64,000 bases of DNA. Origin: Octopus bimaculoides (taxonomy: Eukaryota). Below the pieces are notes generated by a model. The model had not been told where the DNA came from, did no database searches, and saw only the letters and a program-made list of their open reading frames with translations. The translations under genes and the position numbers were made by a program. Numbering within the stretch: the stretch's first letter is position 1; each line of letters opens with the position of its first letter. This document shows positions 413-61,930 of this stretch, piece by piece. The stretch covers positions 22,124,460-22,188,459 of the forward strand of contig NC_069004.1 in the NCBI RefSeq assembly GCF_001194135.2, written 5' to 3'.

Positions 413-575
413 AGGCATAGGAGTGGCTGTGTGGTAAGTAGCTTGCTTACCAACCACATGGTTCCTGGTTCAGTCCCACTGCGTAGCACCTTGTGCAAGT
501 GTCTTCTACTATAGCCTCGGACCAACCAAAGCCTTGTGAGTGGATTTGGTAGACGGAAACTGAAAGAAGCCTGTC
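413..575 (+). mobile_element. tRNA-derived CORE-like SINE family B, head portion
   Basis: A-box TGGCTGTGTGG, B-box GGTTCAGTCCC, CORE-like caccttg(t/g)gcaagtgtcttctactatagcc. Confidence 0.85.
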
Positions 576-4700: not shown

Positions 4701-5271
4701 CACATGCTCTGCTAGCCACACACTTCACTCACTCTCTCTCTCCCTCTATCTCGCTCTTACACACACACACAGCAACAACAGGGAATAGCCTACACAAGAA
4801 TGATAATATTTATTCAGATGTATTGGTTTTGATTTTATTGCTGTTAATAGAATTTTAACATAAACTTCACTAAACCCACACTAATTTATGTAAACTCCCC
4901 CTCTCACCTAACATATTCCACCCCACAATTCCATCATATCAATTTAAAATGTTATCAAAGCCTAAATTTGAAATTTTTTAAAAACAAATTTGTTTTTATT
5001 GTTTCAAATATATCAGTTGATTAAAATGATACCACCAGTATATTAGTGGTACTATTTAACCAGCCACAGAAATATAAAAGTCTTACTTGCAACGAGGAAA
5101 GCTGAGGTTCAGTTTTAATTTGTATTTTGTTGTTAGAAGCAATTCTAATTTGTATTTTGATGTTTAATTTTTGCTATTTTCAAGCAAGATTTTTAAGTAT
5201 GCAGTTCATGTTTATTTGACCTGTAATGTGAAGTATGGGTTCTTGAAAAAATTAAATAGAATGGAAATAAT

Positions 5272-9636: not shown

Positions 9637-10162
9637 CCCTTTAGCATTTAAACCAATCATATCCAGGCCAAATATTCTACCAAACTGGCCAGATTTGACC
9701 TCTCATATCTACCCTAAAATGTCATTCTGAAAATAAACAATCATATCATCAAAATCTTAAGCTGCGAAGCAGTGCCTGATTCAATCAAAACATTGTGAAT
9801 AAAAAACAGAGCATCGGGCTCACAATCATGAGGTAGTGAGTTTGATTCCTAGACCAGGCTGTGTACTGTGTTCTTGAGCAAGACACTTTATTTCACATTG
9901 CACCAATTAACTCGGCTGTAGAAATGAGCTGCGATGTCTCCGATGCCAAGCTGTATTGGCAATTGCCTTTCCCTTGGATGACATCAATGACATGGAGAGG
10001 GAAGGTGGGTATGCATGGGTGACTGCTGGTCTTCCATAAAAACAACTGTGCCCGGATTTGTGCCTCAGAGGGGAATGTTCTAGGTGCAATCTCATGGTCA
10101 TTCATGGCTGTGGGGAGATCTTTACCCTTTGCATTTGACAGAGTAATCTGGGAGCTAAAGGG
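9637..10162 (+). mobile_element. piggyBac-like MITE with nested SINE
   Basis: TTAA|CCCTTTAGCATT at 9633 and GCTAAAGGG|TTAA ending at 10166; internal sequence matches 59860-60079 apart from an insertion of about 320 bp. Confidence 0.85.
9810..10128 (+). mobile_element. tRNA-derived SINE family F
   Basis: gagtttgattcc B-box-like, cttgagcaagacactttatttcac core, tail ..ctaggtgcaatctcatggtcattcatg; reverse copies at about 55955-56250 and 60885-61180. Confidence 0.8.
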
Positions 10163-10339: not shown

Positions 10340-11660
10340 ATTGTAAGGAGACTGCAAGAGGAATACTGAGATAGGGAGAAGGAGTCGTACATGTGCTTCG
10401 TTGATCTGGAGAAGGCATTTGATAAGGTTCCAAAGAAGGTCATTGAGTGGGCATTGAGAAAAAGAGGTGTACTAGAGGTAATAGTGGGGGCAGTAATGAG
10501 TTTGTATGAGGGGGTAAAGACAAGAGTCAGAATTGGATCAGAATTGTTGGAGGAGTTTGCAGTGAAAGTTGGTGTGCATCAGGGATCTGTGTTGTCACCA
10601 TTCTTGTTTGCAGCAGTGGTTGATGTGGTGATGGAGAGTGCAAGAGAGGGACTGCTAATGGAGATACTGTATGCAGATGACCTTGTTCTGATGAGTGAGA
10701 CGATGGAAGGATTGAGGGAGAAGCTTTGGAAATGGAAGGAGGCGTTTGAAAGCAAGGGTTTGAAGGTAAACCTCGGGAAGACAAAGGTGATGGTGAGCGG
10801 GATGGAAGGAGAAGTGTTAGTGTGTAAGGTGGATCCATGTGGTGTATGTGGGAGGAGGGTAATGGCAAATGTGGTGTTGTGTATGTGAGAAATGGATTCA
10901 TGGTAGGTGTATGAAAATGCAGAAAGTGATCCAAAGACTGACAAGAGAGTTTGTTTGTAGAAGATGTGACAAAGGAACTGGGGGCTGGCAGAACCAGTGG
11001 AAACACTATGTGACGAGGTGGAGACAGTGAGAGGGTTTTGTTATTTGGGAGATAGGATGGATGTAAGCGGTGGATGTGAAGCAGTTGTGACAGCAAGAGC
11101 GAGACCTAGGCTGGATGAAGTTCAGGGAATGTAGAGTGTTGTTATATGGGAGAAGATTCTCATTGAAGATGAAAGGAAGGGTCTATAGGAGTTGCATGAG
11201 AACTGCAATGCTGTATGGGAGTGAGACATGGTGTCTGAGAGGGAGAGAGATGGTAATTTTGAGAAGGACTGAGAGAGCAATGGTGAGAGAAATGTGTGGA
11301 GTGAAGCTGTTTGATAATAGGACTGAGGACCTGATGAGGATACTGAGGTTGGAAGAATCGGTAGAACAGCTGGCAAGGGCGAATGGAGTGTGGTGGTATG
11401 GGCATGTGTTGAGGAGGGATGAGGAGCATGTTCTGAGGAGGGTGATTGTGGTTGAGGTAAATGGACAGCGAAAGCGAGGTAGACTGAGGAAATGGTGGAG
11501 GAGATTGGGAGGGTTAGTTTGAAAAAGGAGGATGCCCAAAACCGAGCAAGATGGGGAGATGGTGTGAGAGTGGTTGCTATGGCATTGAGGTAGATCCGCC
11601 CCCCCCCCCATTAACAGGGACAAAACCTGGATTTAAAACACTGGATGATGGATGGATGGA
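10340..11660 (+). mobile_element. 5'-truncated RTE-clade LINE (reverse transcriptase pseudogene with 3' end)
   Basis: FVDLEKAFDKVP, GVHQGSVLSPFLF, LYADDLVL, RTAMLYGSETW, WYGHVLRR and GQRKRGR motifs; (GAT/GGAT)n tail at about 11643-11660; purine-rich plus strand. Confidence 0.93.
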
Positions 11661-16224: not shown

Positions 16225-16691
16225 TTCTAATATTGTTAATATTACTGATGTCACATACTTAAGGTATGGGTTTTGTTTATCTATTTATTAGCTGCAGAAT
16301 TTCGTCCAAGGGAAATAGCTTTAAGTGTTGAAAAATATAGAACACTTCAAACCAGATGAAACAAATTGATCCAAACCAGATGAAATAAATAGATGAATAA
16401 GAAGAATGACTATCAATATTTTGCTGTTATTTCAGCTTTTCGACACCATATACCTGAGTCACCTCAAAACAAATTCAAATCATAAATGCAGATAGTTAAA
16501 ATCTATCAACTGATGTGCAACAGTGTCACACAAGTGAAGCAAAATTCAAGTTTGAATTAGAAGCAGCTCTAATAATATAACAGGACTTTTCACTGAACAA
16601 ATCCTGCAGCCAATAAATGCATAAACAAAGAACATACATTAAGCTGACATGAAAATGATGATGATGATAAAATACTGATCAGTTTACTTAC

Positions 16692-17078
16692 GTCTATTTT
16701 CTTTGAAAGTTCTTTGGCTTTTTCCTCTAAAACTAATTCCAGTTGTCTCCTCTTCGTCTCCTCTTCTAAGGCGGTGTTACGTAAAGTTTCCATCTCTACG
16801 CGGTCAGCATCAATTTGTTTCACCATAAGTCCTTTGCTCTGTAACATTTCTAACAATTTTTTTATACTTTCATCCCTTGCAGCCAAGGTCTGTTTTTGGG
16901 TGGCAATTCTGATTTCCATTTCCTCCACAGTCTTCCGTAAAATAACAAGTTCTTTGTTTTGTTTGTCCTGTTCATATTTCATATTATCCATCTCCTCTTC
17001 ACTAACCGTCCGGTTACTTACTGACTGTCGTGTCTGGTCCAGCTGTAACTGCAGCTCTTTCCCCAATGAACTTTGTCT
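16692..17078 (-). CDS. ERC1: Internal coding exon (129 aa) of ELKS/CAST/ERC (Bruchpilot-family) active-zone scaffold protein
   Basis: Translation contains KELVILRKTVEEMEIRIATQKQTLAARDESIKKLLEMLQSKGL, matching the conserved ERC1/ERC2/BRP motif ELFLLRKTLEEMELRIETQKQTLNARDESIKKLLEMLQSKG. Acceptor ttgttgttttgcAG at 17080-17079, donor GTAAGT at 16691-16686. Length 387 nt, phase 0 at both ends. The symbol denotes the family; invertebrates usually have a single ERC gene. Confidence 0.95.
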
Positions 17079-17326
17079 CTGCAAAACAACAACAATGACA
17101 TTCAGATGAAGAATTGGAAGCAAAATATGGCAGTTTTGAAAAAGATCAAGTAAAGAAAGAAAGTTTGGGGTTCATATTTTAAATGTGGCTGAAAGGGTTA
17201 AGAAACTCGTTTTGCAACCATGTAGTTTTGGGTTAAGTGTGCTGAACCAAGTATCTTCTACTACAGCCCTGGGCTGACCAATATCTTGTGAATGCATATG
17301 CTAGACAGAAACTTGTGAAAGCCTGT

Positions 17327-17373
<47 letters not shown>

Positions 17374-17398
17374 ATATTTATGTCTTTCAAACACATAC

Positions 17399-17435
<37 letters not shown>

Positions 17436-18109
17436 CACACACACATGTACACAATGGTTTTCTTTCACTTTCTGTATGCCACATTCACTCACAAGGCTTA
17501 TTCAGCCTGAAGCTGTAGAAGAAGACGCTTACTCAAGGTGGCACATAGTGAGACTGAACCCGGAACCATGTGGCTGGGAAGCGAACTTCTTACCATACAG
17601 ACATGCCTGCACCTATCAATAAAGTTTAGTCAACACTGTGCGTATAAATGGATGTTAACATTGCTTTTATATACAATATCTTTGTGGACAGAAAAAACCT
17701 TATCAGTTGGACAAGCTTGTGTTGGGATTTCATCAGCAACTGCATTGCTGCTTTAACTATCCACCGAGACACCGCTTACAAAAGCCACTTTAAGTAACAA
17801 GGGCTTTAAGTAACATGGATAGACCAATTTGCATACATAATGCATTCTTGGTAGCTACTTCACTTAAAAAAAAATTACAGGTACATTTATAGTATTTTGT
17901 TTCAATGCTATACTGTTCTATGGAATATATATCTATAGAATTTTAACTCAGCACTGTATGTAAAAGACTGCTTTAAACAATTTGATTTTAAATAAAATAT
18001 CTTTTTAATCTTTTATCTTTTATTTGTTTCAGTCATTAGACCACAGCCATGTGGGGGGGGGGGTCACTGCCTTGAAGACAAAAGAAAAATAAACAGAGAN
18101 NNNNNNNNN

Positions 18110-18161
<52 letters not shown>

Positions 18162-18859
18162 CATGTTTGTCCCTTCCCCACTGCCTGCCTGACAACCAAT
18201 GTTGGTTTGTTTGTGTCTTTTGGCAAAAGAGAGTGATAGAATGAGTACTATAAGTAAGATAAGTACTGAAGTTGATTAGGTTGATTCAACCCTTCAAGGC
18301 AGTGCCCCAGCCTGACCACAGTCCAATGACTGAATCAAGTAAAATATAGGGTGGGCCAAAAGTCATGCACCAAAACGTTTGTCATTTTATTCATAGTTAT
18401 TGAGTGAGAGCAGTACATGCCATCACAGTGACACTGGGGTAAAATATACGAAGCCCAGTATACCCATCATGACTACCTGTCTGATAAGGGTACACCAAGC
18501 ACATACAACACAACTATATGTGCAATGTGATCTCATACCAAAATAAACAGTGCATGACTTTGCATGTGGGGCCCAATTAGAATTTTCTTCATGTCGAGTA
18601 GCCCATCCCACTCAAAGGGTTGCTTAAGGATGTTGAAGGAAACGCCCATGTTTCCAAAGGTGAATTATTCAAACCCCAAAGAATTCCTCTCAACACATGG
18701 CTATGATGCTCCACCACTACTTCTGCTCATGATCATATTGTCCTTCTATTATTTAGAAACCTTATTGTTTCTTTTTATCTAAATCTCATTTCATTATCAC
18801 AATTACAAAGCGTTTCAGAATCGTTTACCTTTAAAGCAAAAAAACAAAACCAACGTAAT

Positions 18860-19196
18860 TTCTAGACAATCAAATTTGGTACAGATTGATCCAGCGGTTT
18901 GGCTGTGCATAGAGGAAACACACACACAGAGTAAAAATAAAAGTGAAACAATAAAAGTGAAACTATAGTGTTATGGAAAGTGAAACTATTATACTGCTGC
19001 GAAAAAAAATGGGAAGGGTCTAGGGGGGGGGGTACAGCCTTCTACATGGACAAGGGTTAAATTTGATCCCCTAGAATCTCCCCGAGTAATGAAAAACCTT
19101 CATGCCAAATTTGGTACAGATTGATCCAGCAATTTGGCCATGCATAGAGGAAACACACACATATGCACACACACAGAGGATTTTATATATAAAGAT
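18860..19196 (+). mobile_element. Possible non-autonomous Helitron/Helentron-like element
   Basis: Duplicated aaatttggtacagattgatccagc...gcatagaggaaacacacac (about 18871 and 19108) and a terminal ttttatatataaagat, resembling Lep1/HINE-type ends. Family call from memory only. Confidence 0.35.
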
Positions 19197-19429
19197 ATAT
19201 CAATGTCTTATGAAAGCTAGGGACAGACTTAAAAAGAGGAAATAATACAACTAATAATAATTCCAAACAAGATACTCTTATTGTCCTGATGACAACTGTC
19301 AGCAGATTCAAGACATGAAAAACCATGAGAGTTACTGGATCACTGGTTACCCGAGTAAAGAGGGCTAACTTGTATTAGTATTTCTCAGTCATCCATCTTC
19401 TCTACCCACTATTCCTGGAAGGGCCATGG

Positions 19430-19690
19430 CAATAGGACCCTATGAAGAGTCACCCCTTCCATATCCTTCCAGGGTCCTATCAGAAGCAACTGTCACCACA
19501 CATTCTGACTGGGTTCCCAAGTGTGACCACCCGAGACTATGGATATTGTCCAACCACCTGGCATATAGTCTACCCCTAGGTCTCCTGCCTGTTGGACTGG
19601 ATTGAAGAATGTGCCTTGTGGATTCTTTCCTATAACATTCTAACCACATATCCATATTACTAGAACTGTGACCTTTTAACATAGATTAGA
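19430..19690 (-). mobile_element. RTE LINE 3' fragment
   Basis: ORF track reads ILQSSPTGRRPRGRLYARWLDNI, the RTE GRRPRGRP..RW.D motif. Confidence 0.65.
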
Positions 19691-21089
19691 TGATTGAGAA
19701 TACTTAGAATTTGGTAGAAGTTGTTGTTGTTTTCGTTGTTGATCTCCAATAATCTGTGACTGAAATAACCAATGATCAAAGGTGTTCCAAACATGACCAT
19801 TCCTCTTTATTCAGATATAAAGTATATCTAAGACTATATTATTCAATATCTTTCATTTTCCAAGACTGAAGCATGGGAGTAGAAGGAATACAGGCTGTTA
19901 TTCTAAGCAGGTCAAATGAAACTGTATGGTTAGTGATTAGGGTATTTGGCTCATGATTGAAAAGTTGTGAGTTCAATTCCTGGTAGCATGATCTGTCCAT
20001 TGCTTCAGTCCACTCAGCTGCCAAAAATGAGTTGTACCTGTATTTGAGCACATAACAAATGAAATATTTGGGCTAGATATAGTGCCAAAAAAGGTTAAAA
20101 AAACAAAATCTGTCACAAAACCCCCATCATTTTAGGTTGCTTTTAGTTTACATTCCCATTAGTTATGTCACTCTTGAAATCACATTCTTACTAATTTTCT
20201 TTAACTTATAGCCAGAAGTCAATATGAGACTGATAATTTCAATTCTACATTTCCACAGAAAATATATGCTCCAATTTACAATGTCTTCTGCTAAATACAA
20301 GTCTGCTCTGAGGGCAGTAGAAATAATGAATAGCATCAACAGGGACTGCAAGGCAGCTTGCAGAAAACTTGAGACTAATAGAGACTGTGACACTTGCTGT
20401 TATCAGAATGCTACCAGATAGACACTAGAGATGCTTGGTGACTGATAGACATACCTTCAACAAAATGCTACTAGACAGGCTACACACAGACATCACGAAC
20501 CCCAACAGCCCCTCAAAGAGCAAGACAAGCAGAGGCTAGATCCTGGCCAAATATGTATCAGTTGTGGAAAAGAGGTGCCTGCAACTATGATGCTGGACAG
20601 GACTATGCTTGTTAAAAAATAGTTTCCGTTGGTACCATGTCTAAGATTTGTGACAGATGCTTGGCTAAGAAAATAAGAGACAAAAATAATATTCTGTTCC
20701 AATGGAAAAGTTAATATATCAGTCTTTAGTGAGTCACCAGAGACCCTAAAATAGCTTCTTACTGCCACTACTGAATAATCTGAGTAGTGAAGGTACATAG
20801 CTTAGTGATTAGGGTATTCGATTCATGATTGTAAGGTCATGAGTTCGATTCCCAGATGCACATTATGTCCTTGAGCTAGACACTTTATTTTACATGCTCC
20901 AGTCCATTCTGCTGGCAAAGATGAGTTGTACCTGTAATTCAAATGGCCAGCCTTGTTACATTTTGTGTCATATTGAATCTTTCTGAGAACTACATGAAGG
21001 GTATATGTGTCTGTGGAGTGCTCAGCAACTTACAGATTAATTTCACAAGCAGGCTGTTCTATTGGTCATATCAATTGGAACCGACTTGT

Positions 21090-21470
21090 TTCAGTCATTA
21101 GGCTGTGGCCATGCTGGGGCTTCACCTTGAGGAATTTTAGTTGAATTAATCATCCACAGGACTTATTCTTTGTAAGCTATGTACTTATTCTATTGATCTC
21201 TTTTGCCAAACCACTAAGTTACAGGGACGTAAGCACACCAACACCAGTTGTCAAGCGGCAGTGGGGGACAAATACAGATGCAAAGACACACACAACCACA
21301 CATATACAACAGGCTTCTTTCAGTTTCCGTTGACCAAATCCACTCACAAGACTTTCGTTGATCTGAGGCTATAGAAAAAGTCACTTGCCCAAAGTGCCAC
21401 ACAGTGGGAGTGAATCCAGAACCATGTAGTTGGGAAGTAAACTTCTTACCACACAGCCATGCCTGTGCCT
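21090..21470 (-). mobile_element. SINE family B, complete two-part copy
   Basis: Head, core, short microsatellite and tail (..cagcatggccacagcc..aatgactgaaacaag) all present in reverse orientation. Confidence 0.8.
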
Positions 21471-22698
21471 AACCTGGTATTTTTATTCAGTACACTCCAA
21501 TTTGGTATAAGTCATCGACACAACAAATAGTGAAATATACTATTCATATCAAATACATAGGACAGTGCCAAATTGCTATAAAACCAGTGTAAAATAATTT
21601 AATGAAAATTAACTAATTAAGAGAAATAGAACAATGGTATATTAAATCAGTTATTCCTTGAACAACTCAGGGTCATTTATAGCTTCTTTTAACCCTGGGC
21701 AACATTGGGTGTTCTGTGTGTGTGTGTGGGGGGGGATTGAACCTAATACTAATACATGGTTGTGGCCTTCCCTACAGAGGTCCCCCATTAATGGCAATTC
21801 GATGACTGACTTCAGAGAGAAGAGAGGCAGAAGAGACCCCAGCCTCTCGTATATCAAGGTCATATGATGTGTTGTTCGTAAATGAATTTCATAGATTCAA
21901 TTGCTGTTGTTAGAAAGTGACCTGAGGTTTAATATTCAATGGGAAGGTGAAAAATCTCAATCAATTTTAAACAGATAAAACAAAAGGTTCTCTCTCCATA
22001 ATAAGTCAACTAATAGGTTTCCTCTTGTAAGCTGGTTGTGGGTAGTTTAACAAGGGTGCTTCTGTGTGTACAGCTGTGAGTGCATATTTGTTTGTGCATG
22101 CATATGCATAACTATACATGTGTATACATGCCTGTGTACATGTTTGTTTTTGTGCATGTATCTCTTTTGTAAGCATGTGAGTGTATTTCCATATGTGTGT
22201 GTGTGTGTGAGTGCAGTATCATGTCTGTGTGTTGTGTGCATATGTAGGTAAACATGAATGTACACACATACATTTTATGAGTGCGTATGTGCCTCCACAT
22301 GTGAGTACCTGCATATACCACATGTATATGTATGAACATACAAGTCTCTGTATATATGTTTAAATGTGCATAAGTTAGTACATGTATGTGTACACATATT
22401 TGTGAGTGTGTGTGTGTATGTGTGTGTAAAGTGTAATAGGTTTAATGTAAGATAAACACAGAGTGACAGCTACATCAAGTTGATGAAAGATTGAAGTAGC
22501 AAATTAGTTGAAGGGCTTCTATAATACGAACACTGGAGCTGACGGATTCACTCATTTTCTCACTTTCTCTCTACCATGCAGACATTTTCTTTCTCTTTTG
22601 AATACCTGGGGGGGGGGGGAGTAACTCTTATATATGTTAAGCCCTTCTTTGCTTTAGCTTAATAAGTAAGGGCTAAGAAACAGGTCGTTGGTTAGAAT

Positions 22699-22984
22699 TA
22701 GTGGTTCTCAACCAGGGCATCCATATAAGATTTTCTAGTTAAAATTAATCTGCAATAAATTGGTTATACCTCTGCAATACACAAAATATTCTATCAATTT
22801 TTTAATACAATTTTATACAAATAGATGTAAGCGTGACTGTGTGGTAAGAAGTTTGCTTCCTAATGCTTTCAGGTTCAGTCCCACTGCATGGCTACATTAG
22901 CCTCAGGCTGACCAAAGCCTTGTGAATGGATTTGGTAGGCAGAAACTGAGAGAAGCTCGTCATGTATGTGTGTGTGCATGTGTA

Positions 22985-23050
<66 letters not shown>

Positions 23051-23465
23051 GATATAGATATATATAGATAGATAGAAAGATAGATAGATAAATGGATGTG
23101 TGTGTCTCTGTGTTCGTGTTTGTCCCTCACCACTGCTTAACAACCGGTGTTGGTATTTATATCCCTGTAATTTAGCGGATTGGCAAAAGAGACTGATAGA
23201 AGTAGTACCAGGATTAAAAAAATAAAATAAAATAAAATAAGTATATGGAGTGATTCAATTGACTAAAAATTCAAGGCGGTGCCCCAGCATGGCCAGTCTG
23301 GTGACTGAAACAAGGAAAAAATACAAGATAAAAAAATTTCTAATATATTTAACTATGAAAATATATGATTTATTGAAACATCAGATGGTTAGGAGGGTAG
23401 ATTCTAGTAAAACAGGGATGTAAAATCAAAGGGGTCCAAAGGTTAAAAATGGTTGAGAAACATTG
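22699..23465. mobile_element. hAT-type MITE interrupted by a SINE
   Basis: TIRs tagtggttctcaacc / ggttgagaaacattg; 8-bp TSD gttagaat (22691-22698) vs gtcagaat (23466-23473). Confidence 0.75.
22830..23325 (+). mobile_element. SINE family B with long internal (TG/TA/TAGA)n tract
   Basis: Head 22830-22960, microsatellite 22962-23105, tail 23110-23325. Confidence 0.8.
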
Positions 23466-23635
23466 GTCAGAATGAAAAGCGAAGTGGGCCTTACAATTTG
23501 AACATAAACATCAAGTCAAAGGGTGATGGTGTGTGATTATTTCAATGAATGTAATGGTACTACTAACTCAGAATTAGAAGCTAGCGTATATATAATTTCA
23601 GTAAAAACCAACTTACTGAACCATTACAAAATGTA

Positions 23636-24922
23636 TCAGGTCATCCCATAAGTTCTGTCCGAATTTTGAATAAAGAAAACAAGTGATCAAATGTTATATT
23701 TAATTGAAATTTAATCACCAATGTACTTTCCCTGATTATCTATGACTTCCTTCCATCTATTTACAAGCTTTTTAATCCCATCAGTGTAAAACTCCTTTGG
23801 TTTCAAAGCGAAGAACTCTGAAATGTCAGTTTCGACCTCCTCCTGGCTTGCGAAAGTTATGTCCCTCAAATGATTCTGTAAACTACGAAACAAATGCTAG
23901 TCTGAAAGAGCAAGGTCGGGAGAATAAGTTGGATGAGGAATTTTTTCCCAACCAATCTCTTCGATCTTCTGTGATGTGATCTTTGCAGTGTGGAGTCGTG
24001 CATTGTCCTGATGAAGCATCATTCCTTTTCGATTCACTTAAGAGGGTAATTTGTTTTTTCTTCAAAACTTGGTTCAAACGCTCTAATTGCTAACAGTAGA
24101 CTTGAGCATTGATTGTTGCATTAGGTGGTAACAATTCAAAGGGAATTACTCCTTTGCAATCCCACCAGATAGAGAGAAAAATCTTTTTTCCATGAAGTTC
24201 TCTTCTCGGTTGTGGTTGAGCTTTTTCCCTTTCACCAAGCCACTGTTTACAACGTTTAACATTTCGATAGATCCATTTTTCGTCACCAGTCACAAGTCTA
24301 TCCAAAAAGGGTGAAATGAGTTTGTGAGAATGGGGAGAAGAGCAGATGTCAACTCAAGATTTGCGGTTGCTTTCGGACAATTCATGAGGCACCCATTTTC
24401 CAAGTTTAGGAACCTTTCCAAGTTGTTGAAGATGATGATGAACAGTTCTATGGTTTGAACTAAGCTTTATTGCCAATTCTTCAACTGATAATGCAGGATT
24501 TTCTTCACGTAATGCCTCAAGGAACTTATACTCAAACTCAACTGGACGTCTTGTTCGATCTTCATTTGCAAGGTTGAAATCTCCACTTCTGAATTTTGCC
24601 AACCATCTTCTGCAAGTTCTTTCATTCAAGCATTCTTTCCCATAAACTGAGTGTATATTTCGAGTCGCTTCGGATGCAGAGTTTCCTTTTTTTGTACTCA
24701 TAAAGCATTATGTGCCTTAAATGCTCTTTGGATACTTCCATGTTAGAAAGGGTTTTAATTAAAGAAATTTTAACTCTATTATTCTGTAAAATAATATTTA
24801 ATTAGTTTAAATGTACACAAATGCATAAAACTAATTTTTAATTCCATTAGACATTCTAAAATACTATTAAATTTCATTCAATTTTAAAAAAAGGTAAAAT
24901 CGGACAGAACTTGTGGGATGAC
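23636..24922 (-). mobile_element. Near full-length decayed mariner transposon
   Basis: TIRs gtcatccca(t/c)aagttctgtccg at both ends, right tip eroded. Transposase motifs WVPHEL, VTGDEKW and FRSLQNHL occur in several frames; start ATG at 24741. Confidence 0.93.
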
Positions 24923-38490: not shown

Positions 38491-38801
38491 TTGGTTGGTG
38501 TTTGTCAGATGATGTCAGAGATGAAAGGGGTGATAAATGACATTTGCTCCATTAATTTTACATCAAGATGAGAGCTTTGGGGCAAATTGGCCAACAGTTG
38601 GAATTCAACTTGGGACTGAAACAATAGAATGATTGCATTACAGAATTAATTCTCATCCATCCTTAACCTCTGATCAAACACCACTAGGTGTTTATTATAG
38701 ATGTATCATAGTCATGCTATTTAGCCGTCTTTAGCCCTCCACAGGAGCTAGCTTAACAGTACGCATGGATTGCTGCTTTTAAGCTAGTATGTAATATGTA
38801 T

Positions 38802-38851
<50 letters not shown>

Positions 38852-39503
38852 ATAAGTTTCGGCCAGTACTGGCTCAGGCCATGCCTAACTTAATAGCACC
38901 ACCAGAGTGTGTGTGTATATATGTGTGTATGTACGTGTGTGCATGTATATACATACACACATAGACATGCATACATATATGTACATACATTCATATATAA
39001 ATATAGGCACATTCACGTGTGTATGTGCATGTATATGTATACATACATACATATACACATAGGCACATATAATATACAATTAGATGTAATGTTCATATAA
39101 TATACACACAAATACATATACATTATATAATATGTGTGTGTGTACAGAAGGAAATATGGTTACTGGTAATAAAATCACAATAAGATTCCAGTTGTAGTAA
39201 ACATTAGCCCTAACAGTTGAACTCTTGCTTTTAGCATTACTGTTGAATTCCAAGTTGGCTTTGATTGGCCAAGCCTGGAATCAAAAGCATTCCAACCATG
39301 ACCATCTCATATTGTTTCCTCTTGACACAGGAAATTTGGCTACTATTTCTGGCAGGACAATGAACCACATAAAACAATACCTTTACAAGTTTACCATTCT
39401 GACTGTCCCCCACTGCCATCACCACTCACATATGTAAGACATATTTAGTCAGCTAACTGCAGTCAACCCATGCAAGCATGGAAAGATTTTGAAATGATGA
39501 TGA

Positions 39504-39511
39504 CACACGGG

Positions 39512-39571
<60 letters not shown>

Positions 39572-39622
39572 NNNNNNNNNNNNNNNNNNNNNNNNNNNNN
39601 NNNNNNNNNNNNNNNNNNNNNN

Positions 39623-39691
<69 letters not shown>
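39504..39691. repeat. (GT)n-gap-(GA)n compound microsatellite
   Basis: Read directly; N gap at 39572-39621. It represents dozens of CA/TA/GA tracts in the window. Confidence 0.95.
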
Positions 39692-39694
<3 letters not shown>

Positions 39695-41155
39695 TATATA
39701 TAAGCACAAGAACATATTACACAGCCACATATTCATGTAGCCATCTTTCAGACAATGCCATAGGGAATATTACCCTAACAGGCCTGTTCCGGAACACATT
39801 GAATGAGGAGAACTTATTTAGATAAAGTGGTGTGGGTAGTTTAACATATAACACTGACCCTGGTCAGGACACTAAACCATAGTGGGAAATATCTGGTAAG
39901 CTACTCCCATGTCATGTGACCAATGCCCCAAATTCTGGTTTCAATTTTGGCCTTCAAGTTTTAAACTGTTAATACTCTTTGGAAAAAGGCATTAAAAATA
40001 AATAAAAAAAGAAACCAAAAGCATAAACATGACTGCATGGTAAGAAGTTTAGTTCACAACCATAGAGTTCTGGGTTCAAATCCCACTGTGTTGTGTATTG
40101 GCAAATGATTTCTGCTATAGTCCTGAACCGTCCAATCCTTTGCAAGTAAATTTGACAGAAAAAAAAACTTGCCAAAACCCATTGTCTATTCATGTGTGTG
40201 TACACGTGAATGTTTTTCCCTTACAGCTTGACAACTGGTGTTGGTTTGTTTACATTCCCACAATTTAATAGTTTGACAAAAAGATGCTGATAGAATAAGT
40301 ACCAAACTTAAGAATATGCACTGGAAATAATTTGATCAACTGAAACCTTCAAGATAGTGCCACAGCATGGCCACAGTCCAATGATCAAAACAAGTAAAAC
40401 AATAAAATAATATACTGTTCTTTACACATGCACACAGTCATAAAGCACAAGTGCACACACATACACACACACATGTGCACACACACACACACACACATGT
40501 GCACACACACACACGCACACACATACACAAAGCTCAAACACCTGTACATTTCAAGTTTTGTGCTTGCTCATATATGGAAAAAAAAGTTGGTTGAAAGCCA
40601 AGTTTACATCACATTACATAATGCTACACCATGTTACATGACACCACCCTGGCCCACCCCACAGAACACGACACCATCATCACCATCGTCACCACACTGC
40701 ACACAAAGTAACGTGCTAGACAGAGCAATGTATGTTATCATATGACCTGCTAGAAATAACAGCTAAATCTTAAAATCACACCCAAAATTTTTGAAGAAAA
40801 TAGGACACGTTAATATGGCCCTAGATTATGACATAGGGAAAAGATGAGATGGTCATGGTTTGAAGGCCTTTGATGAGAGATCTGTTTAATCAGAGTTGGT
40901 CTCATTGACCAGGAGATAAACATCATTATACTGAACTGTATTAGAGAACACAAAACATAAGGATAGACAACTACCCCTGCCGACATCACAGCATCACATC
41001 ACCAAGTTCAATCACTTGCCATCACAACAAAATCACACCACCACAATCACCATCTCCGTCACCTTCATAATCTCACAATATCCATCATACTGTCAGATAT
41101 CACATGTTAGACCACATCACTAACATTCCCTTCACTTTATTGGCTTCTGCTGTAC

Positions 41156-41191
<36 letters not shown>

Positions 41192-41206
41192 ACTCTGTGT
41201 TTAAAT

Positions 41207-41238
<32 letters not shown>

Positions 41239-41427
41239 GATGTGTCAGTGCGTGTGTAATATTCAGTATCGTTAATCAATAAAAATCAGATAACATCAAC
41301 CATTTAGTCATGATGGGACATTACACTATTAGTAGAGTAAAATTTATTTATCACATTAAAATTGACTAAGACTTAAAATTTCACCTTAACTTATTCAATA
41401 CATATTTACACACACACATATATATAT

Positions 41428-41585
41428 AAGGTGTGGCTGTGTGATGAGAGGCTTGCTTCCCAACCACATGGTTCCAGGGTCAGTCCCACTGCGTGACACC
41501 TTAGGCAAGTGTCTTCTACAATGGCCTCGGGTCAACCAATGCCTTATGAGTGGATTTGGTAGATGGAAACTGAAAGAAGCTTGTC

Positions 41586-41617
<32 letters not shown>

Positions 41618-41725
41618 TTGTCTCCTAGTACCACTTGACAACCACTTGCCATAACTTAGCAGTTCAGCAAAAGAGGCTGATAGACTAAGTATCAGGCTTA
41701 ACAAAGAGTAAGTACTGGGGTGTAT
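41428..41725 (+). mobile_element. SINE family B copy
   Basis: ggtgtggctgtgtg...ggtcagtcccactgcgtgacaccttaggcaag...(TG)n...ttagcagttcagcaaaagag. Confidence 0.8.
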
Positions 41726-42465
41726 TCATTTGACGAAAAAAGAATGCTCCAGTATAGTCACAGTGTAATGAGTGAAAGAAATGAATANNNNNNNNNNNNN
41801 NNNNNNNNNNNNNNNNNNNNNNNNNNNNNNNNNNNNNNNNNNNNNNNNNNNNNNNNNNNNNNNNNNNNNNNNNNNNNNNNNNNNNNNNNNNNNNNNNNNN
41901 NNNNNNNNNNNNNNNNNNNNNNNNNNNNNNNNNNNNNNNNNNNNNNNNNTATATATATACAAAGCAGATAATAGATACACATGTACTTCACAGTACACAT
42001 GTCAACTCATCTAAAAACAAGGTACTTTTCATTGAAAGGAATAGAAAAATCTCGAATATATAACCCAGAGCATACATACATACACAAAACACATATTTCT
42101 GTGAGTATTTGTGTGTGTGTGCTATCATGTATCCACACATTGAACACTTATACAATACACACAAATACATGTGTTTATATACACACATCTGCATCAATTC
42201 CATTCATACAAATATCACTGTGCAAACACATCTACACTCGTACTAATACACCTTCATGCCGAGAGCTACAGACACACACAAACACACTTATACCTCTACA
42301 TACTCATGCACACAAACCAGTACATCTACACCTATGCACACACAGACACTGAACTAAACACATCTATACCTGAATACTCAGCTATACTTATAGAGACAAA
42401 CATGCGTGCAAACACCTATACTTAGATAAACCCATACACACTCGAATACATATATCTACATACAC

Positions 42466-42496
<31 letters not shown>

Positions 42497-42522
42497 GAGA
42501 GAGAGAAAGATATATGCATGTA

Positions 42523-42603
<81 letters not shown>

Positions 42604-42604
42604 G

Positions 42605-42649
<45 letters not shown>

Positions 42650-42659
42650 TATATATCTT

Positions 42660-43028
42660 TTCTCTTTTACTTGTTTCAGTCACTGCCTTCAAGAATTTTT
42701 AGTCGAATGCATTGACCCCAGTACTTACGTTTTGTTAAGTCTGGTACTTATTCTATCAGTCTCTTTGTCAAACTGCTAAGTTATGGGGACATAAACACGC
42801 CAACACCAGATGTCAAGCAGTGGCGGGGTCAAAGACAGACAGACACACACACACACACATATATACAGCAAGCTTTTTTTCAGTTTCCATCTACCAAATC
42901 TACTCACAAGGGTTTTGGTCGGACCAAGGCTTTAGTAGAAGACATTTGCCTAAGGTGACACACAATGGAACTGAACTAGGAACTATGTGGTTGGGAAGCA
43001 AGCTTCTTATCACAAAGCCACACCTGCA
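42660..43028 (-). mobile_element. SINE family B copy
   Basis: Same two-part structure in reverse orientation, starting about 100 nt into the intron after the MLSRLW donor. Confidence 0.8.
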
Positions 43029-43134
43029 CCAATATATATAAATACACACACACACACACACACAATCTAACTTTTTTCAGGAAATACAAAGATAACAACA
43101 ACAGCAACAAGTGTTCTACATATTCGGTACTTAC

Positions 43135-43152
43135 CCACAATCTGCTTAACAT
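43135..43152 (-). CDS. Candidate coding end of an alternative first exon (MLSRLW) of the ERC gene
   Basis: Minus strand reads aacaata ATG TTA AGC AGA TTG TGG | GTAAGT: A at -3, full consensus donor, phase 0. It joins the 17078 exon in frame as MLSRLW-RQSSLGKELQ. No transcript evidence. Confidence 0.55.
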
Positions 43153-44253
43153 TATTGTTGTTTTGTTGTCCAATTATATTAATTTGTTTCTCTCCTACTT
43201 TCCTTCCTAGTAGGTAAAGGTGTTGTGATTTTGCCCACTTCCACTGTATGTGTAGGGTTTTGGGGTTTCTTTTTTGTCTTTTTATGATCCAAGAAATGTC
43301 AAAATTGTCAAAATCCAATGACACACCCACTAATCCAAGTAACTGCTAAACTGACTGTCCAAGACCAGGTGACTGACCAGCGCAACTGAACCCCAAGTAT
43401 GTAGGTGTGTATATGTGTGAGTGTATGCATAAGTGTGTGTGTGTGTATAGTTCTAATAGTTTAATAATGCTACTGTAAATGATGATGATGATGATAATTA
43501 TAATGATAATTGGAAAAAGTAATAATGTTATTAGTATCAATAATAATTTGTAAAAATAAAAAGTAATAAGAATAATAATGCAAATGATGCCACTGGGGGT
43601 TTCCTATAGAGGCATGTTGCCACAGTGTGATGGGATGTTGAGGTTTTCATGCTTTTCTCAGCTTCATTAAAGATCATATAATGCATTAAAAATAATAAAA
43701 ATCTAAAGAAAGAAAACAGAAAAAAATCCAATACCACAAAGTCCCGGCAATTCCATGCAAAGGAAACTCGGAAACTGGAAGGGAGACGATGGGCAGTCGA
43801 AGGTCGTGGACTCGGCTTTGGTAAATGACAACGACAACAACAATGCTGACGATGACAACAACAACAATGATAATAATAATAATAATAACAATATGGACTT
43901 CCGGGTGATAATAAGCTATACTAATGATGTTGATGGTGACAATGATTGATAGTGATGAGGGTAGTGCTGGTAATGTAAATAGTGCAGTGATGCAAAACAC
44001 GAGCAGATGCACTTCAATGTGCAAGCATGTTCATTGATGAGAGAGAAATCGGAAGGCGGCAGAATTTGAAGGAAAAAAGAAAAGTGAAAATAAAAAACAA
44101 GTTAAGAATGACAAGCTGGGGAAAGTGAGAAAGTAAGAAATGGGGAGAGAAAGAAAGGGAGAATGGAAGAATACGAAGGAGAAAACAAACGAGAAATAAA
44201 GAATGAAAGAAAAAGGAAGGAAACTGGAACGAAGAGGAATGAAAGTGACAGAA

Positions 44254-44288
<35 letters not shown>

Positions 44289-44800
44289 AGAAATAAGAAA
44301 TAACCACTAATAAATATCTAAAATGTGCAGTTGCATATATAAGATGCGCTGTTTGCACTGCTGTGTGTTATTGATTGATTGATTCTGCTGGTTTCACCTT
44401 CATCTCTTTCTTCCTAGTTTTCATTAAATGAATGAAAAGTGGTAGTGGGAGGAGGAGGAAGTACAATAGTGTAGTAATAGTGGTAGTAGTAAGAGAGGAA
44501 AGTAGTAGTAGTAGTAGTAGTGTTGGTGTTGATAAGGACAGTAATAGTAAGTGTAGGAGTGGATACAGTGTGTAAGTAGTAGTAGTAGTAGTAGTGATGG
44601 TGATGGTTAATGGTAACAGTTATGGCAGTAGCAGGCAAGAGAGGAAGGATGAGGGGCATTAGATGATGAAGAGAGGGAGAGGGAGGGGGGGGGAAGTGAG
44701 AAGAGAAAGGAAAGAGAAAAGAAAAGAAGCAGTCAGACCGGCCAGCATTATTTGGACAGAATTGATAGCACAGTGGTCAAAATACCTGATGGAAGATAGT
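43153..44800 (-). promoter_or_regulatory. Candidate internal promoter / 5'UTR block upstream of the MLSRLW exon
   Basis: About 1.6 kb with no recognisable SINE or MITE, several retained CpGs and pyrimidine-rich simple repeats on the minus strand, ending at a strong donor. The TSS cannot be located from sequence. Confidence 0.3.
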
Positions 44801-52110: not shown

Positions 52111-53859
52111 CTTGACAGTTATATTTTTTACTGGCATTCCATTGGTTATGACAAGTGTTCCAGTCCAATGGAACAACCTGCTCATTATATTAACATGCAA
52201 GTGGCTGAGCACTCCATAGACACATGTACCACTTAACATAGTTCTCAGAGAAATCTAGCATGACACAAAATGTGACAAGGTTGGCTCTTTGAATTACAGG
52301 TACAACTCATTTTTGCTAGCTAAGTGTACTGGTGCAACGTGAAATAAAATGTCTTGCTCAAGGACGCATTGTGCCACTGGGAATTGAACTCATGACCTTA
52401 TGAGCATGAGCTGAATACCCTAACTACCAAGCCATGTGCCCTCACTAGAGCAATCTGAATGCAAAAGTGTTAAGAAGGGTTTTTACTAGTTAGTTGTTTA
52501 AGCTATGTATGATCAAAGATATTCAAATAATTGTCTATCTAGGACTACATGATTTAGTGTGCCTTCCTTCTCTTTTTGAAGATGATTGGGTGTGGTTTGA
52601 GGGATATGTGGCTGCTATTTAAAGATAGTAGAATTAACGTGGGACCTGTTATCAGTTGATTTTGATAGAATCAAAACCAAATACATTGTTTGACAGAAGT
52701 CTTCAGTCAGGTATGATGGAACCAAGACTTAAACTGTTGCGTTTGACAGAAGATATCACCAGTTGTATTTGGTGAAGTCAAGACTAAACAACTTGTGTTT
52801 TGACAGAAACTACCATCACATACAAATGCACATGGCTGAGTGGTTAAGTTGAAGTGACACTTCATTTCATGTTACTCCGGTCCCACTTTCGATCAGTGGA
52901 AATGGTTGGTCTGCTTGCCTTGCCAGCAGGGTGACATGATTCAAAGAACAAAACAAAGCAAAGTGTATTGTGACCAGTGATGTGTAACAACATCTGATAG
53001 TCTGGCCAGTCACATGATCACATGAACACACACACACTCATATACATACATATCCATACATAAATACATACACACATATATATGTACAAATATATACCCA
53101 TACATATACACACACAACATATAAATACACCTGTATACATACAATGAGCTTCCATCTACATGGTTGGTTTGAGTTATAGTAGAAAACTTTTGTTCAAAGT
53201 GTCATGCAAATGAGATTGAACCTGAAATCACCTGGTTGAAAAGCAAATTTCTTAACACAGCCTGCACCTCTAAAAAAGCAGGATGATCATTTTCGAAACA
53301 CCTTGGATCAGAATTGATTTGCGGCTAAACAATGTCTTTTACAGAGTGAATTGTACCTCCTCATGCTACCTATTTGTATCTTGATAAAAGAGCCGTTTGA
53401 ATCTTTTATTTTTCACCTTTTACTTGTCTTAGTCATTTTTAATTGAATAAAGCAACCCTTTTTTTAAAGTCTGGTGCTTATTCTATCAATCTCTTTTTGT
53501 CGAACTGCTAAGTTACAGGTATGTAAACACACAAACACCAGTTGTCAAGTGGTGGGAGACAAACATGCACATAGACACACATGTGCACACATATATATAA
53601 ATAAATAAATATGGGATTCTTTCAGTTTCCGTGTACCAAATCCACTCACATGGCCCAAGGTTATTGAAGAAAACACTTGCCTAAAGTGCAACACAGTGGA
53701 ACTGAACCTGGAATCACATGGTTGAAATGTGAGCTTTTTACCATACAACTGGGCATGAAATACTATCTCTGACCAGTTGTCCAACATACATTGAACAACT
53801 GAGAATACTCAGTAATGTATGGATGAATGCATTTGTGCATCTCCTCCTCCTCCTCATCA

Positions 53860-61654: not shown

Positions 61655-61930
61655 TGTCATCACTCCATACTATGTGTCATCACTCCATACTATGTGTCAT
61701 CACTCTTCACTATGCATATTGTCACTCCTCACTAAGGATGTTATTACTTATTCTTGTGTCATCACTNNNNNNNNNNTCATCACTCCATACTATGTGTCAT
61801 CACTCTTCACTATGCATATTGTCACTCCTCACTAAGGATGTTATTACTTATTCTTGTGTCATCACTCCATCCCTGTGTGTCATCACTTTATCCACGCGTG
61901 CCATCACTCTATCCTGTATATCATCACTCC
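61655..61930. repeat. Degenerate approximately 20-bp tandem repeat (tcatcactcc-based) spanning an assembly gap
   Basis: Recurrent gtcatcactc units; about 90 bp duplicated exactly on either side of Ns 61768-61776. Confidence 0.8.

What the first reader, a model, noticed from the sequence alone, without database searches (positions are those of the whole stretch)
43129..43175. Candidate alternative first exon giving an N-terminally truncated ERC isoform starting MLSRLW
Seen: ATG in A(-3) context, six codons, then G|GTAAGT, phase 0, joining in frame to the phase-0 ERC exon (MLSRLW-RQSSLGKEL). It sits at the end of a TE-free block. Established: Drosophila brp makes long and short isoforms from alternative promoters. 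The junction used here aligns to the position just after the conserved SSM.SIKTFWSPELKKER segment, which I did not find in this window. Inference: a two-promoter architecture of the active-zone scaffold may be shared between molluscs and arthropods. I recall a similar short N-terminal peptide in insect BRP isoforms but cannot verify it here.
Basis: partly seen in the sequence, partly recalled or inferred. Interest (0 to 1): 0.7.

Follow-up and report, generated by a model that had tools for sequence, protein, structure and literature searches.

The report
Conserved short-isoform start exon of octopus ELKS
A tiny six-codon exon inside a 190-kb octopus synapse-scaffold gene (ELKS/ERC) is a real alternative start exon, conserved across octopuses, cuttlefish and squid, that yields a protein lacking its first 330 residues; this kind of short isoform is already known in flies and mice, so it is a solid but modest result.

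Summary
On the minus strand, ATG (43152-43150) opens MLSRLW. It is followed by G|GTAAGT (donor 43134-43129) and can join in phase 0 to the only ERC/ELKS exon in the window (17078-16692, aa 331-459 of O. bimaculoides ELKS).

The motif alone is not significant: 3-6 similar ATG...GTRAGT candidates lie in the 47 kb upstream. External evidence settles it:
- Octopus sinensis RefSeq isoform X3 (XP_036368899.1, 874 aa) starts MLSRLWRQSSLGKEL.
- A spliced cuttlefish-like transcript contig starts MLSRLWRQSSLGKEF.
- A squid-like transcript contig starts MLGKLWRQSSLGKEF.
- The Argonauta hians genome has ATG TTA AGC AGG TTA TGG|gtgagt about 4.8 kb upstream of the orthologous exon, as a small conserved island in unalignable intron (chance about 1e-7).

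Codon changes are mostly synonymous. All four sequences have an upstream in-frame stop.

It is therefore a genuine alternative 5' coding exon. Its product lacks the Ser-rich N-terminus and the SIKTFWSPELKKER block.

The parallel with Drosophila BRP-170 and mammalian beta-ELKS is one of kind only. Those isoforms are cut further downstream and lose the ARDESIKKLLEMLQ block, which the cephalopod isoform keeps. The TSS and usage in O. bimaculoides itself remain unmeasured.

The parts
43153..43176 (-). Proximal 5' leader of the alternative exon: an A/C-rich stretch (ggacaacaaaacaacaata), A at -3, and an in-frame TAA at 43176-43174. The upstream limit of the exon (TSS) is not determined.
   Evidence: An A/C-rich leader and a purine at -3 are also seen in Argonauta, cuttlefish and squid.
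43135..43152 (-). Coding part of the alternative 5' exon: ATG TTA AGC AGA TTG TGG = MLSRLW.
   Evidence: The identical peptide is at the N-terminus of O. sinensis XP_036368899.1 (P0370) and cuttlefish-like P0387. The squid-like P0247 has MLGKLW. The Argonauta genome has it at L007 5101-5118.
43129..43134 (-). Splice donor GTAAGT (phase 0).
   Evidence: The Argonauta orthologue has GTGAGT.
17079..43134 (-). Intron of 26,056 nt between the mini-exon and the shared exon. It is rich in SINE copies, microsatellites and assembly gaps.
   Evidence: The equivalent interval in Argonauta is about 4.8 kb.
17079..17100 (-). Shared acceptor: polypyrimidine tract plus CAG (tgtcattgttgttgttttgcag).
   Evidence: It is conserved in a related Octopus and in Argonauta.
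16692..17078 (-). ERC/ELKS coding exon of 387 nt (129 codons), phase 0 at both ends: RQSSLGKELQLQL...AKELSKKID. This is aa 331-459 of full-length O. bimaculoides ELKS and aa 7-135 of the short isoform. It contains the conserved ARDESIKKLLEMLQSKG block.
   Evidence: Pfam Cast PF10174 matches.
16686..16691 (-). Donor GTAAGT of the shared exon.
   Evidence: The next residues in the proteins are ENGILSNQL; that exon is not in the window.

Best explanation
The window is part of the Octopus bimaculoides ELKS/ERC (CAST/BRP-family) gene, on the minus strand. Positions 43152-43135 are the coding part of an alternative 5' exon. This exon lies inside the large intron between the exon ending ...ITQAEFQ (outside the window) and the exon starting RQSSLGKEL (17078).

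Transcripts that start at or upstream of this mini-exon splice its GTAAGT donor to the same phase-0 acceptor that the full-length mRNA uses. Translation starts at the mini-exon ATG. The product is about 874 aa: MLSRLW plus residues 331-1198. It lacks the Ser-rich N-terminal 260 residues and the first ~100 positions of the Cast domain, including SIKTFWSPELKKER. It keeps the ARDESIKKLLEMLQSKG block, the remaining coiled coils and the C-terminal Rab-binding/FIP region.

What is shown:
- The sequence anatomy.
- The existence of this exact N-terminus in an O. sinensis RefSeq model and in spliced transcripts of two decapodiform species.
- Genomic conservation of the exon and donor in Argonauta.
- A substitution pattern indicating that the hexapeptide itself is under purifying selection.

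What is inferred:
- That the exon is used in O. bimaculoides.
- That it is truly the first exon, with its own promoter within a few hundred bp.
- That loss of the N-terminal coiled coil changes partner binding. In mammals the CCA-CCC region binds liprin-alpha and LL5beta, and in Drosophila the BRP N-terminus binds the Ca2+ channel. The short form may therefore be a scaffold with altered anchoring.
For: - Anatomy: ATG, six codons, G|GTAAGT, phase-0 join, upstream in-frame TAA.
- The window exon is identical to aa 331-459 of ELKS [O. bimaculoides] UVH70854.1.
- XP_036368899.1 isoform X3 [O. sinensis] is 874 aa and starts MLSRLWRQSSLGKEL.
- Logan contig L005 (SRR25158152) encodes an 872-aa ORF starting MLSRLWRQSSLGKEF. 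L006 (SRR27666071) encodes a 798-aa ORF starting MLGKLWRQSSLGKEF. Both are spliced and have non-ERC leaders with in-frame stops.
- Argonauta hians genome L007 5101-5118 reads ATG TTA AGC AGG TTA TGG|gtgagt, about 4.8 kb upstream of the orthologous RQSSLGKEL exon. It is a ~35-nt conserved island in otherwise unalignable sequence. The expected chance occurrence is 2e-8 to 9e-8 per 10 kb.
- Among the four species, codon differences are TTA/TTG, AGC/AGT, AGA/AGG and TTG/TTA (synonymous), plus two conservative replacements in squid only (S>G, R>K).
- All four have a purine at -3.
- Pfam: the Cast domain spans 261-1061 in the long form. The short form matches profile positions 101-766 only.
Against: - No RNA evidence from O. 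bimaculoides itself was available. Its RefSeq isoforms in the cluster (X1-X3: 1198, 1140 and 1104 aa) do not include a short form.
- The O. sinensis isoform is a computational RefSeq model whose supporting reads I could not inspect.
- The TSS is unmapped. The decapod leaders are only 48 and 80 nt, so further upstream non-coding exons cannot be excluded.
- No promoter signature (GC rise, CpG island) is visible around 43.2-44.9 kb.
- There is no protein-level evidence.
- The motif by itself is not above chance.
Confidence: 0.85

Rival explanations
1. The exon is real and coding, but it is not the first exon. One or more non-coding exons and the true promoter lie further upstream, possibly beyond the few hundred bp next to it. 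On this reading 43129-43175 is exon 2 of the short-isoform transcript.
For: - A plausible acceptor (cctttacctactag|GAAGG) lies about 50 nt upstream of the ATG.
- No promoter-like composition is seen nearby.
- The decapod leaders are short (48 and 80 nt) and are not alignable to the octopus upstream sequence.
- Other multi-part non-coding leaders exist at this gene (L010, 240 nt).
Against: - The A/C-rich sequence directly upstream of the ATG is shared by genomic (Octopus, Argonauta) and transcript (cuttlefish, squid) sequences, so at least ~15-20 nt are collinear.
- There is no AG between the in-frame TAA and the ATG in the window.
- Nothing positively shows an upstream exon.
Confidence: 0.2
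2. This is a chance ATG...GTAAGT motif in a long intron with no function. The resemblance to annotated isoforms is coincidental or a gene-prediction artefact.
For: - Three to six equivalent phase-0 candidates occur in the 47 kb upstream.
- Gene predictors do invent starts. The Batillaria model begins with intron read-through 'MSQ'.
Against: - The same hexapeptide joined to the same exon appears in two de novo spliced transcript assemblies from different decapodiform species.
- It appears as a conserved genomic island with a donor in Argonauta; chance is about 1e-7.
- The substitutions are mostly synonymous.
Confidence: 0.02
3. The element is a poison or cassette exon. It is included between the upstream constitutive exon and the RQSS exon in transcripts from the main promoter, where its in-frame TAA would truncate the protein or trigger NMD. 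It would not be an alternative start exon.
For: - The in-frame TAA 24 nt upstream of the ATG would terminate a read-through from the phase-0 upstream exon if an acceptor further upstream were used.
- A candidate acceptor exists.
Against: - Transcript contigs L005 and L006 carry non-ERC leaders, not upstream ERC coding sequence.
- Conservation is at the amino-acid level of the six codons after the ATG, with synonymous changes. This is not expected for a poison exon.
- RefSeq models it as a start.
Confidence: 0.05
4. The exon is functional in other coleoids but is not used, or is used only negligibly, in O. bimaculoides.
For: O. bimaculoides RefSeq isoforms in the cluster are all long. In mammals the beta isoforms make up only about 5% of ELKS protein (PMC5830537).
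Against: ATG, all six codons, the consensus donor, the upstream stop and the -3 purine are all intact in the window. The peptide is identical to that of the sister species O. sinensis.
Confidence: 0.07

Closest known systems
ELKS/Rab6-interacting/CAST family member 1 isoform X3, Octopus sinensis (XP_036368899.1, 874 aa)
   Same: It has the identical N-terminal hexapeptide MLSRLW joined at the identical junction to RQSSLGKEL. It is the orthologous gene, and the rest of the protein is collinear with the long isoform.
   Different: It is a computational RefSeq model in a sister species. No equivalent isoform is among the O. bimaculoides RefSeq proteins seen here. Its genomic locus could not be fetched.
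Drosophila Bruchpilot BRP-170 (Matkovic et al. 2013, PMC3747298)
   Same: It is a short isoform of the ELKS-family active-zone scaffold, made from a second internal promoter. It has only a very short unique N-terminal peptide (9 aa) spliced onto shared exons, and it lacks the conserved N-terminal ELKS-homology stretch.
   Different: The truncation point differs. Residue Q261 lies in a BRP-190-exclusive exon, and the conserved IARD-QAKG block is at 247-264. BRP-170 therefore loses that block, whereas the cephalopod short form keeps ARDESIKKLLEMLQSKG. Sequence similarity of the unique peptides was not testable here because no BRP sequence was retrieved.
Mammalian beta-ELKS (ELKS2beta from alternative exon 1''; ELKS1beta from a secondary start codon; Kaeser 2009 and Liu 2014 as reviewed in PMC5830537)
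   Same: These are N-terminally truncated isoforms of the same family, made by alternative 5' exon or start usage. They lose N-terminal coiled-coil interaction sites.
   Different: They lack about 350 residues, which is beyond the NARD-QSKG block at 303-320 in mouse. That is a larger deletion than in cephalopods. They are reported as minor species (about 5%). There is no known conserved unique peptide comparable to MLSRLW.
Non-coding-leader short isoforms at the same acceptor (O. sinensis isoform X4, 839 aa; squid contig L008; cuttlefish contig L010)
   Same: They use the same acceptor at the RQSSLGKE exon and are N-terminally truncated products of the same gene.
   Different: The leader has in-frame stops and no ATG, so translation starts 35 residues further in, at MDxMK. 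The corresponding leader was not found in the window.

Membership tests
ERC/ELKS/CAST/BRP active-zone scaffold gene (Pfam PF10174 Cast) | The exon product matches the Cast domain and known ELKS proteins. | tested here: met
   All top hits of the exon carry PF10174. The exon is identical to aa 331-459 of ELKS [O. bimaculoides]. Cast matches at E = 4.6e-125 in the long isoform and 1e-106 in the short one.
ERC/ELKS/CAST/BRP active-zone scaffold gene (Pfam PF10174 Cast) | Conserved ARDESIKKLLEMLQSKG block and C-terminal Rab6-binding/FIP-RBD region. | tested here: met
   The block is present in window exon 16692-17078. RBD-FIP PF09457 matches in P0246 and P0370. The C-terminal exons themselves are outside the window.
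Alternative-5'-exon short ELKS/BRP isoforms (BRP-170 / beta-ELKS class) | mRNA whose 5' end is a distinct leader lacking the upstream coding exons, spliced to a shared downstream exon. | tested here: met
   Contigs L005 and L006 have non-ERC leaders with in-frame stops, followed by ATG, six codons and the shared exon. This was shown in decapodiforms, not in O. bimaculoides.
Alternative-5'-exon short ELKS/BRP isoforms (BRP-170 / beta-ELKS class) | Short isoform-specific N-terminal peptide. | tested here: met
   MLSRLW or MLGKLW (6 aa) in four coleoids. BRP-170 has 9 unique aa.
Alternative-5'-exon short ELKS/BRP isoforms (BRP-170 / beta-ELKS class) | Independent promoter/TSS mapped upstream of the alternative exon. 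| not testable with these tools
   No CAGE, 5' RACE or RNA-seq for this locus. Composition shows no obvious promoter signature.
Alternative-5'-exon short ELKS/BRP isoforms (BRP-170 / beta-ELKS class) | Short protein detected (Western blot or mass spectrometry). | not testable with these tools
   No proteomic data were accessible.
Positional homologue of the BRP-170 / beta-ELKS start (shared ancestral internal promoter) | Truncation at the same position of the protein alignment. | tested here: not met
   The cephalopod junction lies between the SIKTFWSPELKKER block and the ARDESIKKLLEMLQ block. BRP-170 lacks at least residues up to 261, within IARD-QAKG 247-264. Beta-ELKS lack about 350 aa. This comparison rests on published numbering, not on an alignment made here.
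Positional homologue of the BRP-170 / beta-ELKS start (shared ancestral internal promoter) | Presence of the same mini-exon in non-cephalopod molluscs or other protostomes. | tested here: inconclusive
   No short MLSRLW-type isoform was found among RefSeq isoforms of 10 gastropod, bivalve and nemertean clusters. The Batillaria 'MSQ' start is an artefact. A nemertean isoform X6 starts at an internal Met of the orthologous exon, which hints at an alternative leader there. The introns of these species were not scanned.

The most novel reading that the evidence does not exclude
The six-residue peptide ML(S/G)(R/K)LW may itself be a functional module. An example would be a hydrophobic Met-Leu N-terminus of the type acetylated by NatC that serves for targeting or partner binding. 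An internal transcription start feeding the RQSS/ARDESIKKLLEMLQ exon may also be an old lophotrochozoan, or even bilaterian, feature of ELKS genes. On that reading, the cephalopod coding mini-exon, the non-coding leaders (O. sinensis X4, squid L008, cuttlefish L010, nemertean X6), BRP-170 and beta-ELKS would be descendants or repeated re-inventions of it.
Probability: 0.15. Interest if true: 0.6.

Novelty: new member of a known kind. Interest (0 to 1): 0.38.

Why it matters
ELKS/CAST/BRP scaffolds organise the presynaptic active zone. [quoted passage not shown] Cephalopods evolved large brains independently, and their synaptic scaffold isoforms are almost undescribed. The one comparative study found here looked at alternative transcripts only for unc13 (PMC9282427).

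A short ELKS isoform whose six-residue N-terminus is held constant from octopus to cuttlefish gives a concrete, testable handle. Isoform-specific probes, antibodies against the N-terminus, or deletion of an 18-nt exon could be used to ask whether long/short scaffold pairing is a general principle of complex synapses.

It also corrects the annotation of O. bimaculoides, where this isoform is missing. The result is incremental rather than surprising, because the isoform is already modelled in O. sinensis RefSeq and the principle is known in flies and mice.

Tried and rejected
The exon alone was used instead.
- I searched the 87-aa ORF overlapping the mini-exon, hoping to pull orthologous genomic contigs of related octopuses. 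It found nothing.
- The O. sinensis locus could not be fetched. Isoform X3 is not on record and the X1 gene range is 190 kb.
- A human ERC1 probe recalled from memory was used only to look for further exons. It found just the one exon, later confirmed with the real O. bimaculoides protein.
- The Batillaria model starting 'MSQ|RHRDLL' at the same junction looked like a gastropod counterpart. It is intron read-through...tgtcttgATGTCTCAG|AGG. Rejected.
- The 321-325-aa ORFs ending at the upstream junction (oyster P0422, octopus P0375) looked like an N-terminal-only isoform. They are better explained as a large first coding exon read into its intron, in samples that also contain unspliced sequence. 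Not pursued.
- The decapod non-coding leaders (L008, L010) and the 5' UTRs of L005 and L006 gave no credible match in the window or in Argonauta.
- An attempt to retrieve an insect BRP cluster for a direct alignment returned only deuterostome and nemertean proteins.
- The bacterial-type promoter scan was not used because it is irrelevant for an animal gene.

Full report
**What is in the sequence**

The gene lies on the minus strand. At 43152-43135 the sequence reads ATG TTA AGC AGA TTG TGG (MLSRLW), followed directly by GTAAGT at 43134-43129. There is an A at -3. An in-frame TAA sits 24 nt upstream (43176-43174), with no in-frame ATG in between.

About 26 kb downstream in gene orientation, the acceptor ...ttgttttgcag| (AG at 17080-17079) opens a 387-nt exon at 17078-16692. 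It is phase 0 at both ends and encodes RQSSLGKELQLQL...AKELSKKID. Its own donor GTAAGT is at 16691-16686.

**Is the motif alone meaningful?**

No. In the 46.9 kb upstream of the acceptor, three phase-0 ATG-open-frame-GTAAGT candidates and six with GTRAGT occur. A six-codon start exon of this form is what a long AT-rich intron yields by chance. Nothing in the local base composition marks a promoter.

**Gene identity and context**

- The exon's best matches all carry Pfam Cast PF10174.
- A search with a long cephalopod ERC protein returned ELKS [Octopus bimaculoides] UVH70854.1 (P0246, 1198 aa). Its residues 331-459 are identical to the window exon, and the preceding residues are ...NSIKTFWSPELKKERAQRKEEVSKYLNLNEQLKITQAEFQ|.
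- The window is therefore O. bimaculoides or a near-identical genome.
- It contains a single ELKS coding exon. The SIKTFWSPELKKER exon and the next downstream exon both lie outside it.
- This fits a gene range of about 190 kb in O. sinensis.
It is 25 residues after it.

**Decisive external evidence**

1. The 90% cluster of octopus ELKS proteins includes XP_036368899.1, 'isoform X3 [Octopus sinensis]', 874 aa. It begins MLSRLWRQSSLGKELQLQLDQTRQSVSNRTVSEEEM... This is exactly the predicted splice product, and 874 = 6 + (1198 - 330).

2. Two de novo transcript contigs from public sequencing runs carry the same architecture.
   - L005 (SRR25158152, 2841 nt) falls in the cluster that is 94% identical to Acanthosepion pharaonis ERC1, so it is cuttlefish-like. 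It encodes an 872-aa ORF starting MLSRLWRQSSLGKEF.
   - L006 (SRR27666071, 2773 nt) is from a more divergent decapodiform. It encodes a 798-aa ORF starting MLGKLWRQSSLGKEF.
   - Both are fully spliced ORFs. Their leaders (48 and 80 nt) contain no ELKS coding sequence and have an in-frame TAA.

3. The Argonauta hians genome (L007, GCA_054771915.1) carries ATG TTA AGC AGG TTA TGG|gtgagt at 5101-5118. This is about 4.8 kb upstream of the orthologous exon (gttgcag|AGA CAG AGC TCC CTG GGG AAG GAA TTG CAG...).
   - Around it, only about 35 nt align convincingly with the window: the A/C-rich 12 nt before the ATG, the 18 coding nt, and the donor. The flanks are unalignable low-complexity sequence.
   - The expected number of chance MLSRLW+GTRAGT occurrences in 10 kb is 2e-8 to 9e-8.

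4. The four coding sequences differ as follows.
   - Leu2: TTA/TTG
   - Ser3: AGC/AGT
   - Arg4: AGA/AGG
   - Leu5: TTG/TTA
   - These are all synonymous. The only replacements are S>G and R>K, in the squid-like sequence.
   - All four have a purine at -3, an upstream in-frame stop and no in-frame upstream ATG.

This pattern indicates selection on the encoded peptide, and hence on translation from this ATG, not merely on a splice site.

**Interpretation**

The element is a genuine alternative 5' coding exon of coleoid ELKS. It shares the phase-0 acceptor used by the full-length mRNA. The constitutive upstream donor in a related octopus is ...GAA TTT GAG|gtaaga, also phase 0.

The product lacks the Ser-rich N-terminal ~260 residues and the first ~100 profile positions of the Cast domain. 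Cast spans 261-1061 in the long form, and the short form matches profile positions 101-766. The product retains the ARDESIKKLLEMLQSKG block, the remaining coiled coils and the FIP-RBD region.

From the literature, N-terminal coiled coils of ELKS mediate liprin-alpha and LL5beta binding, and the BRP N-terminus binds the Ca2+ channel (PMC5830537, PMC3747298). That the short isoform is a scaffold with altered anchoring is an inference, not shown here.

Three things remain unmeasured:
- whether the exon is literally the first exon;
- where the TSS lies;
- how much it is used in O. bimaculoides.

The O. bimaculoides RefSeq isoforms seen (X1-X3) are all long.

**Comparison with known systems**

Drosophila brp makes BRP-190 and BRP-170 from two promoters, and BRP-170 has only 9 unique N-terminal residues (PMC3747298).

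Vertebrate Erc1 and Erc2 also make alpha and beta forms, by a secondary start codon or an alternative exon 1''. The beta forms lack about 350 residues (PMC5830537). A long/short architecture was thus already known in both arthropods and vertebrates.

The cut points differ:
- The review places the conserved blocks at D.m. 123-164 and 247-264 (IARD-QAKG), and at mouse 163-204 and 303-320.
- The brp-delta190 stop at Q261 lies in a BRP-190-exclusive exon.
- BRP-170 and beta-ELKS therefore lose the second block.
- The cephalopod short form starts between the two blocks and keeps the second.

The systems are analogous, but positional homology of the internal promoters is not supported. This rests on published numbering; I could not retrieve BRP sequences for a direct alignment.

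Outside cephalopods I found no MLSRLW-type isoform among RefSeq isoforms of ten gastropod, bivalve and nemertean clusters. A Batillaria model starting 'MSQ' at the same junction is intron read-through.

**Additional finding**

A second class of leader uses the same acceptor.
- Squid-like L008 and cuttlefish-like L010 have non-coding leaders with in-frame stops joined directly to the RQSS exon.
- Translation would then begin at the internal MDxMK, 35 residues further in.
- O. sinensis isoform X4 (839 aa, MDNMKHEQ...) has this form.
- A nemertean isoform X6 starts at an internal Met of the orthologous exon.
- The intron upstream of this exon thus seems to host more than one alternative start in coleoids.
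- Those leaders were not detectable in the window.

**Novelty and verdict**

The isoform is already present as a predicted protein in RefSeq for the sister species. The kind of isoform is well known. The literature held here does not describe it for cephalopods: the Aplysia/Octopus synaptic scaffold comparison analysed alternative transcripts only for unc13 (PMC9282427).

I classify it as a new member of a known kind.

The most novel reading not excluded has two parts. One is that the conserved hydrophobic-basic hexapeptide has a function of its own. The other is that internal starts at this exon are ancient.

Noticed in passing
L008 1-71; L010 1-240 (related loci); acceptor at window 17079-17080: There is a second class of 5' leader. 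Squid-like and cuttlefish-like transcript contigs join a non-coding leader (with in-frame stops) to the same RQSS acceptor, so the ORF starts at the internal MDxMK. O. sinensis isoform X4 (839 aa) and nemertean Tubulanus isoform X6 (642 aa) look like the same class. The leader was not found in the window.
   Followed up: partly
window 42686-43044 (+ copies at 21125-21465, 41429-41740, 2210-2514, 53460-53743, 40038-40314, 34770-35049, 400-585 and others): A SINE-like repeat family has at least 9 copies in the window (68-82% identity). One copy plus an (AC)n run (43044-43064) begins 65 nt downstream (gene sense) of the mini-exon donor.
   Followed up: partly
window 5635-6216 (-), 24090-24701 (-), 10391-10888 (+): There are degenerate mariner/Mos1-type transposase fragments (Pfam Transposase_1, HTH_48) and a reverse-transcriptase fragment (RVT_1) inside the ELKS introns.
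   Followed up: partly
window 44467-44595 (sense strand ACT/CTA units); L007 3001-5081: Long ACT/ACC triplet-repeat arrays lie on the sense strand upstream of the mini-exon in both Octopus and Argonauta, about 2 kb of them in Argonauta, ending 20 nt before the ATG. A polypyrimidine (CT-rich) stretch is at window 44060-44300. The meaning is unknown; it could be promoter-associated or simply microsatellite-prone sequence.
   Followed up: no
L007 ~9990-10117: The Argonauta orthologue of the RQSS exon carries a ~120-nt purine/GGN-rich insertion relative to Octopus. The GenBank model GAB1606323.1 starts 'partial' inside it with an odd N-terminus (TTAVAGAGART...), so that model is probably mis-started. 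The real start options are the upstream exons, including the MLSRLW exon at 5101-5118.
   Followed up: partly
P0387 versus P0247 (related proteins): The short N-terminus occurs with both C-terminal variants: the long ...IRAVRKIEHSKKRL...DTESCQST end (with FIP-RBD) and the short ...DEGLQRRNAAAAAGAAASMSFDSASTS end. N- and C-terminal alternatives therefore appear to combine freely, as in mammalian alpha/beta x A/B ELKS.
   Followed up: no
L011 1560-1580; P0375, P0422: ORFs of 321-325 aa covering the whole N-terminal part and ending just past the ...AEF(E/Q)| or ...AELK| junction are common in assemblies (oyster: 246 contigs). Most likely this is one large N-terminal coding exon read into its intron rather than an N-terminal-only isoform. 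Intronic polyadenylation at this intron was not excluded.
   Followed up: partly
window 88-414, 26400-26900, 41790-41960, 32080-32120, 39570-39620, 61760-61770: There are several runs of N (1026 N in total), meaning assembly gaps, mostly next to microsatellites. Intron lengths given here are therefore approximate.
   Followed up: no
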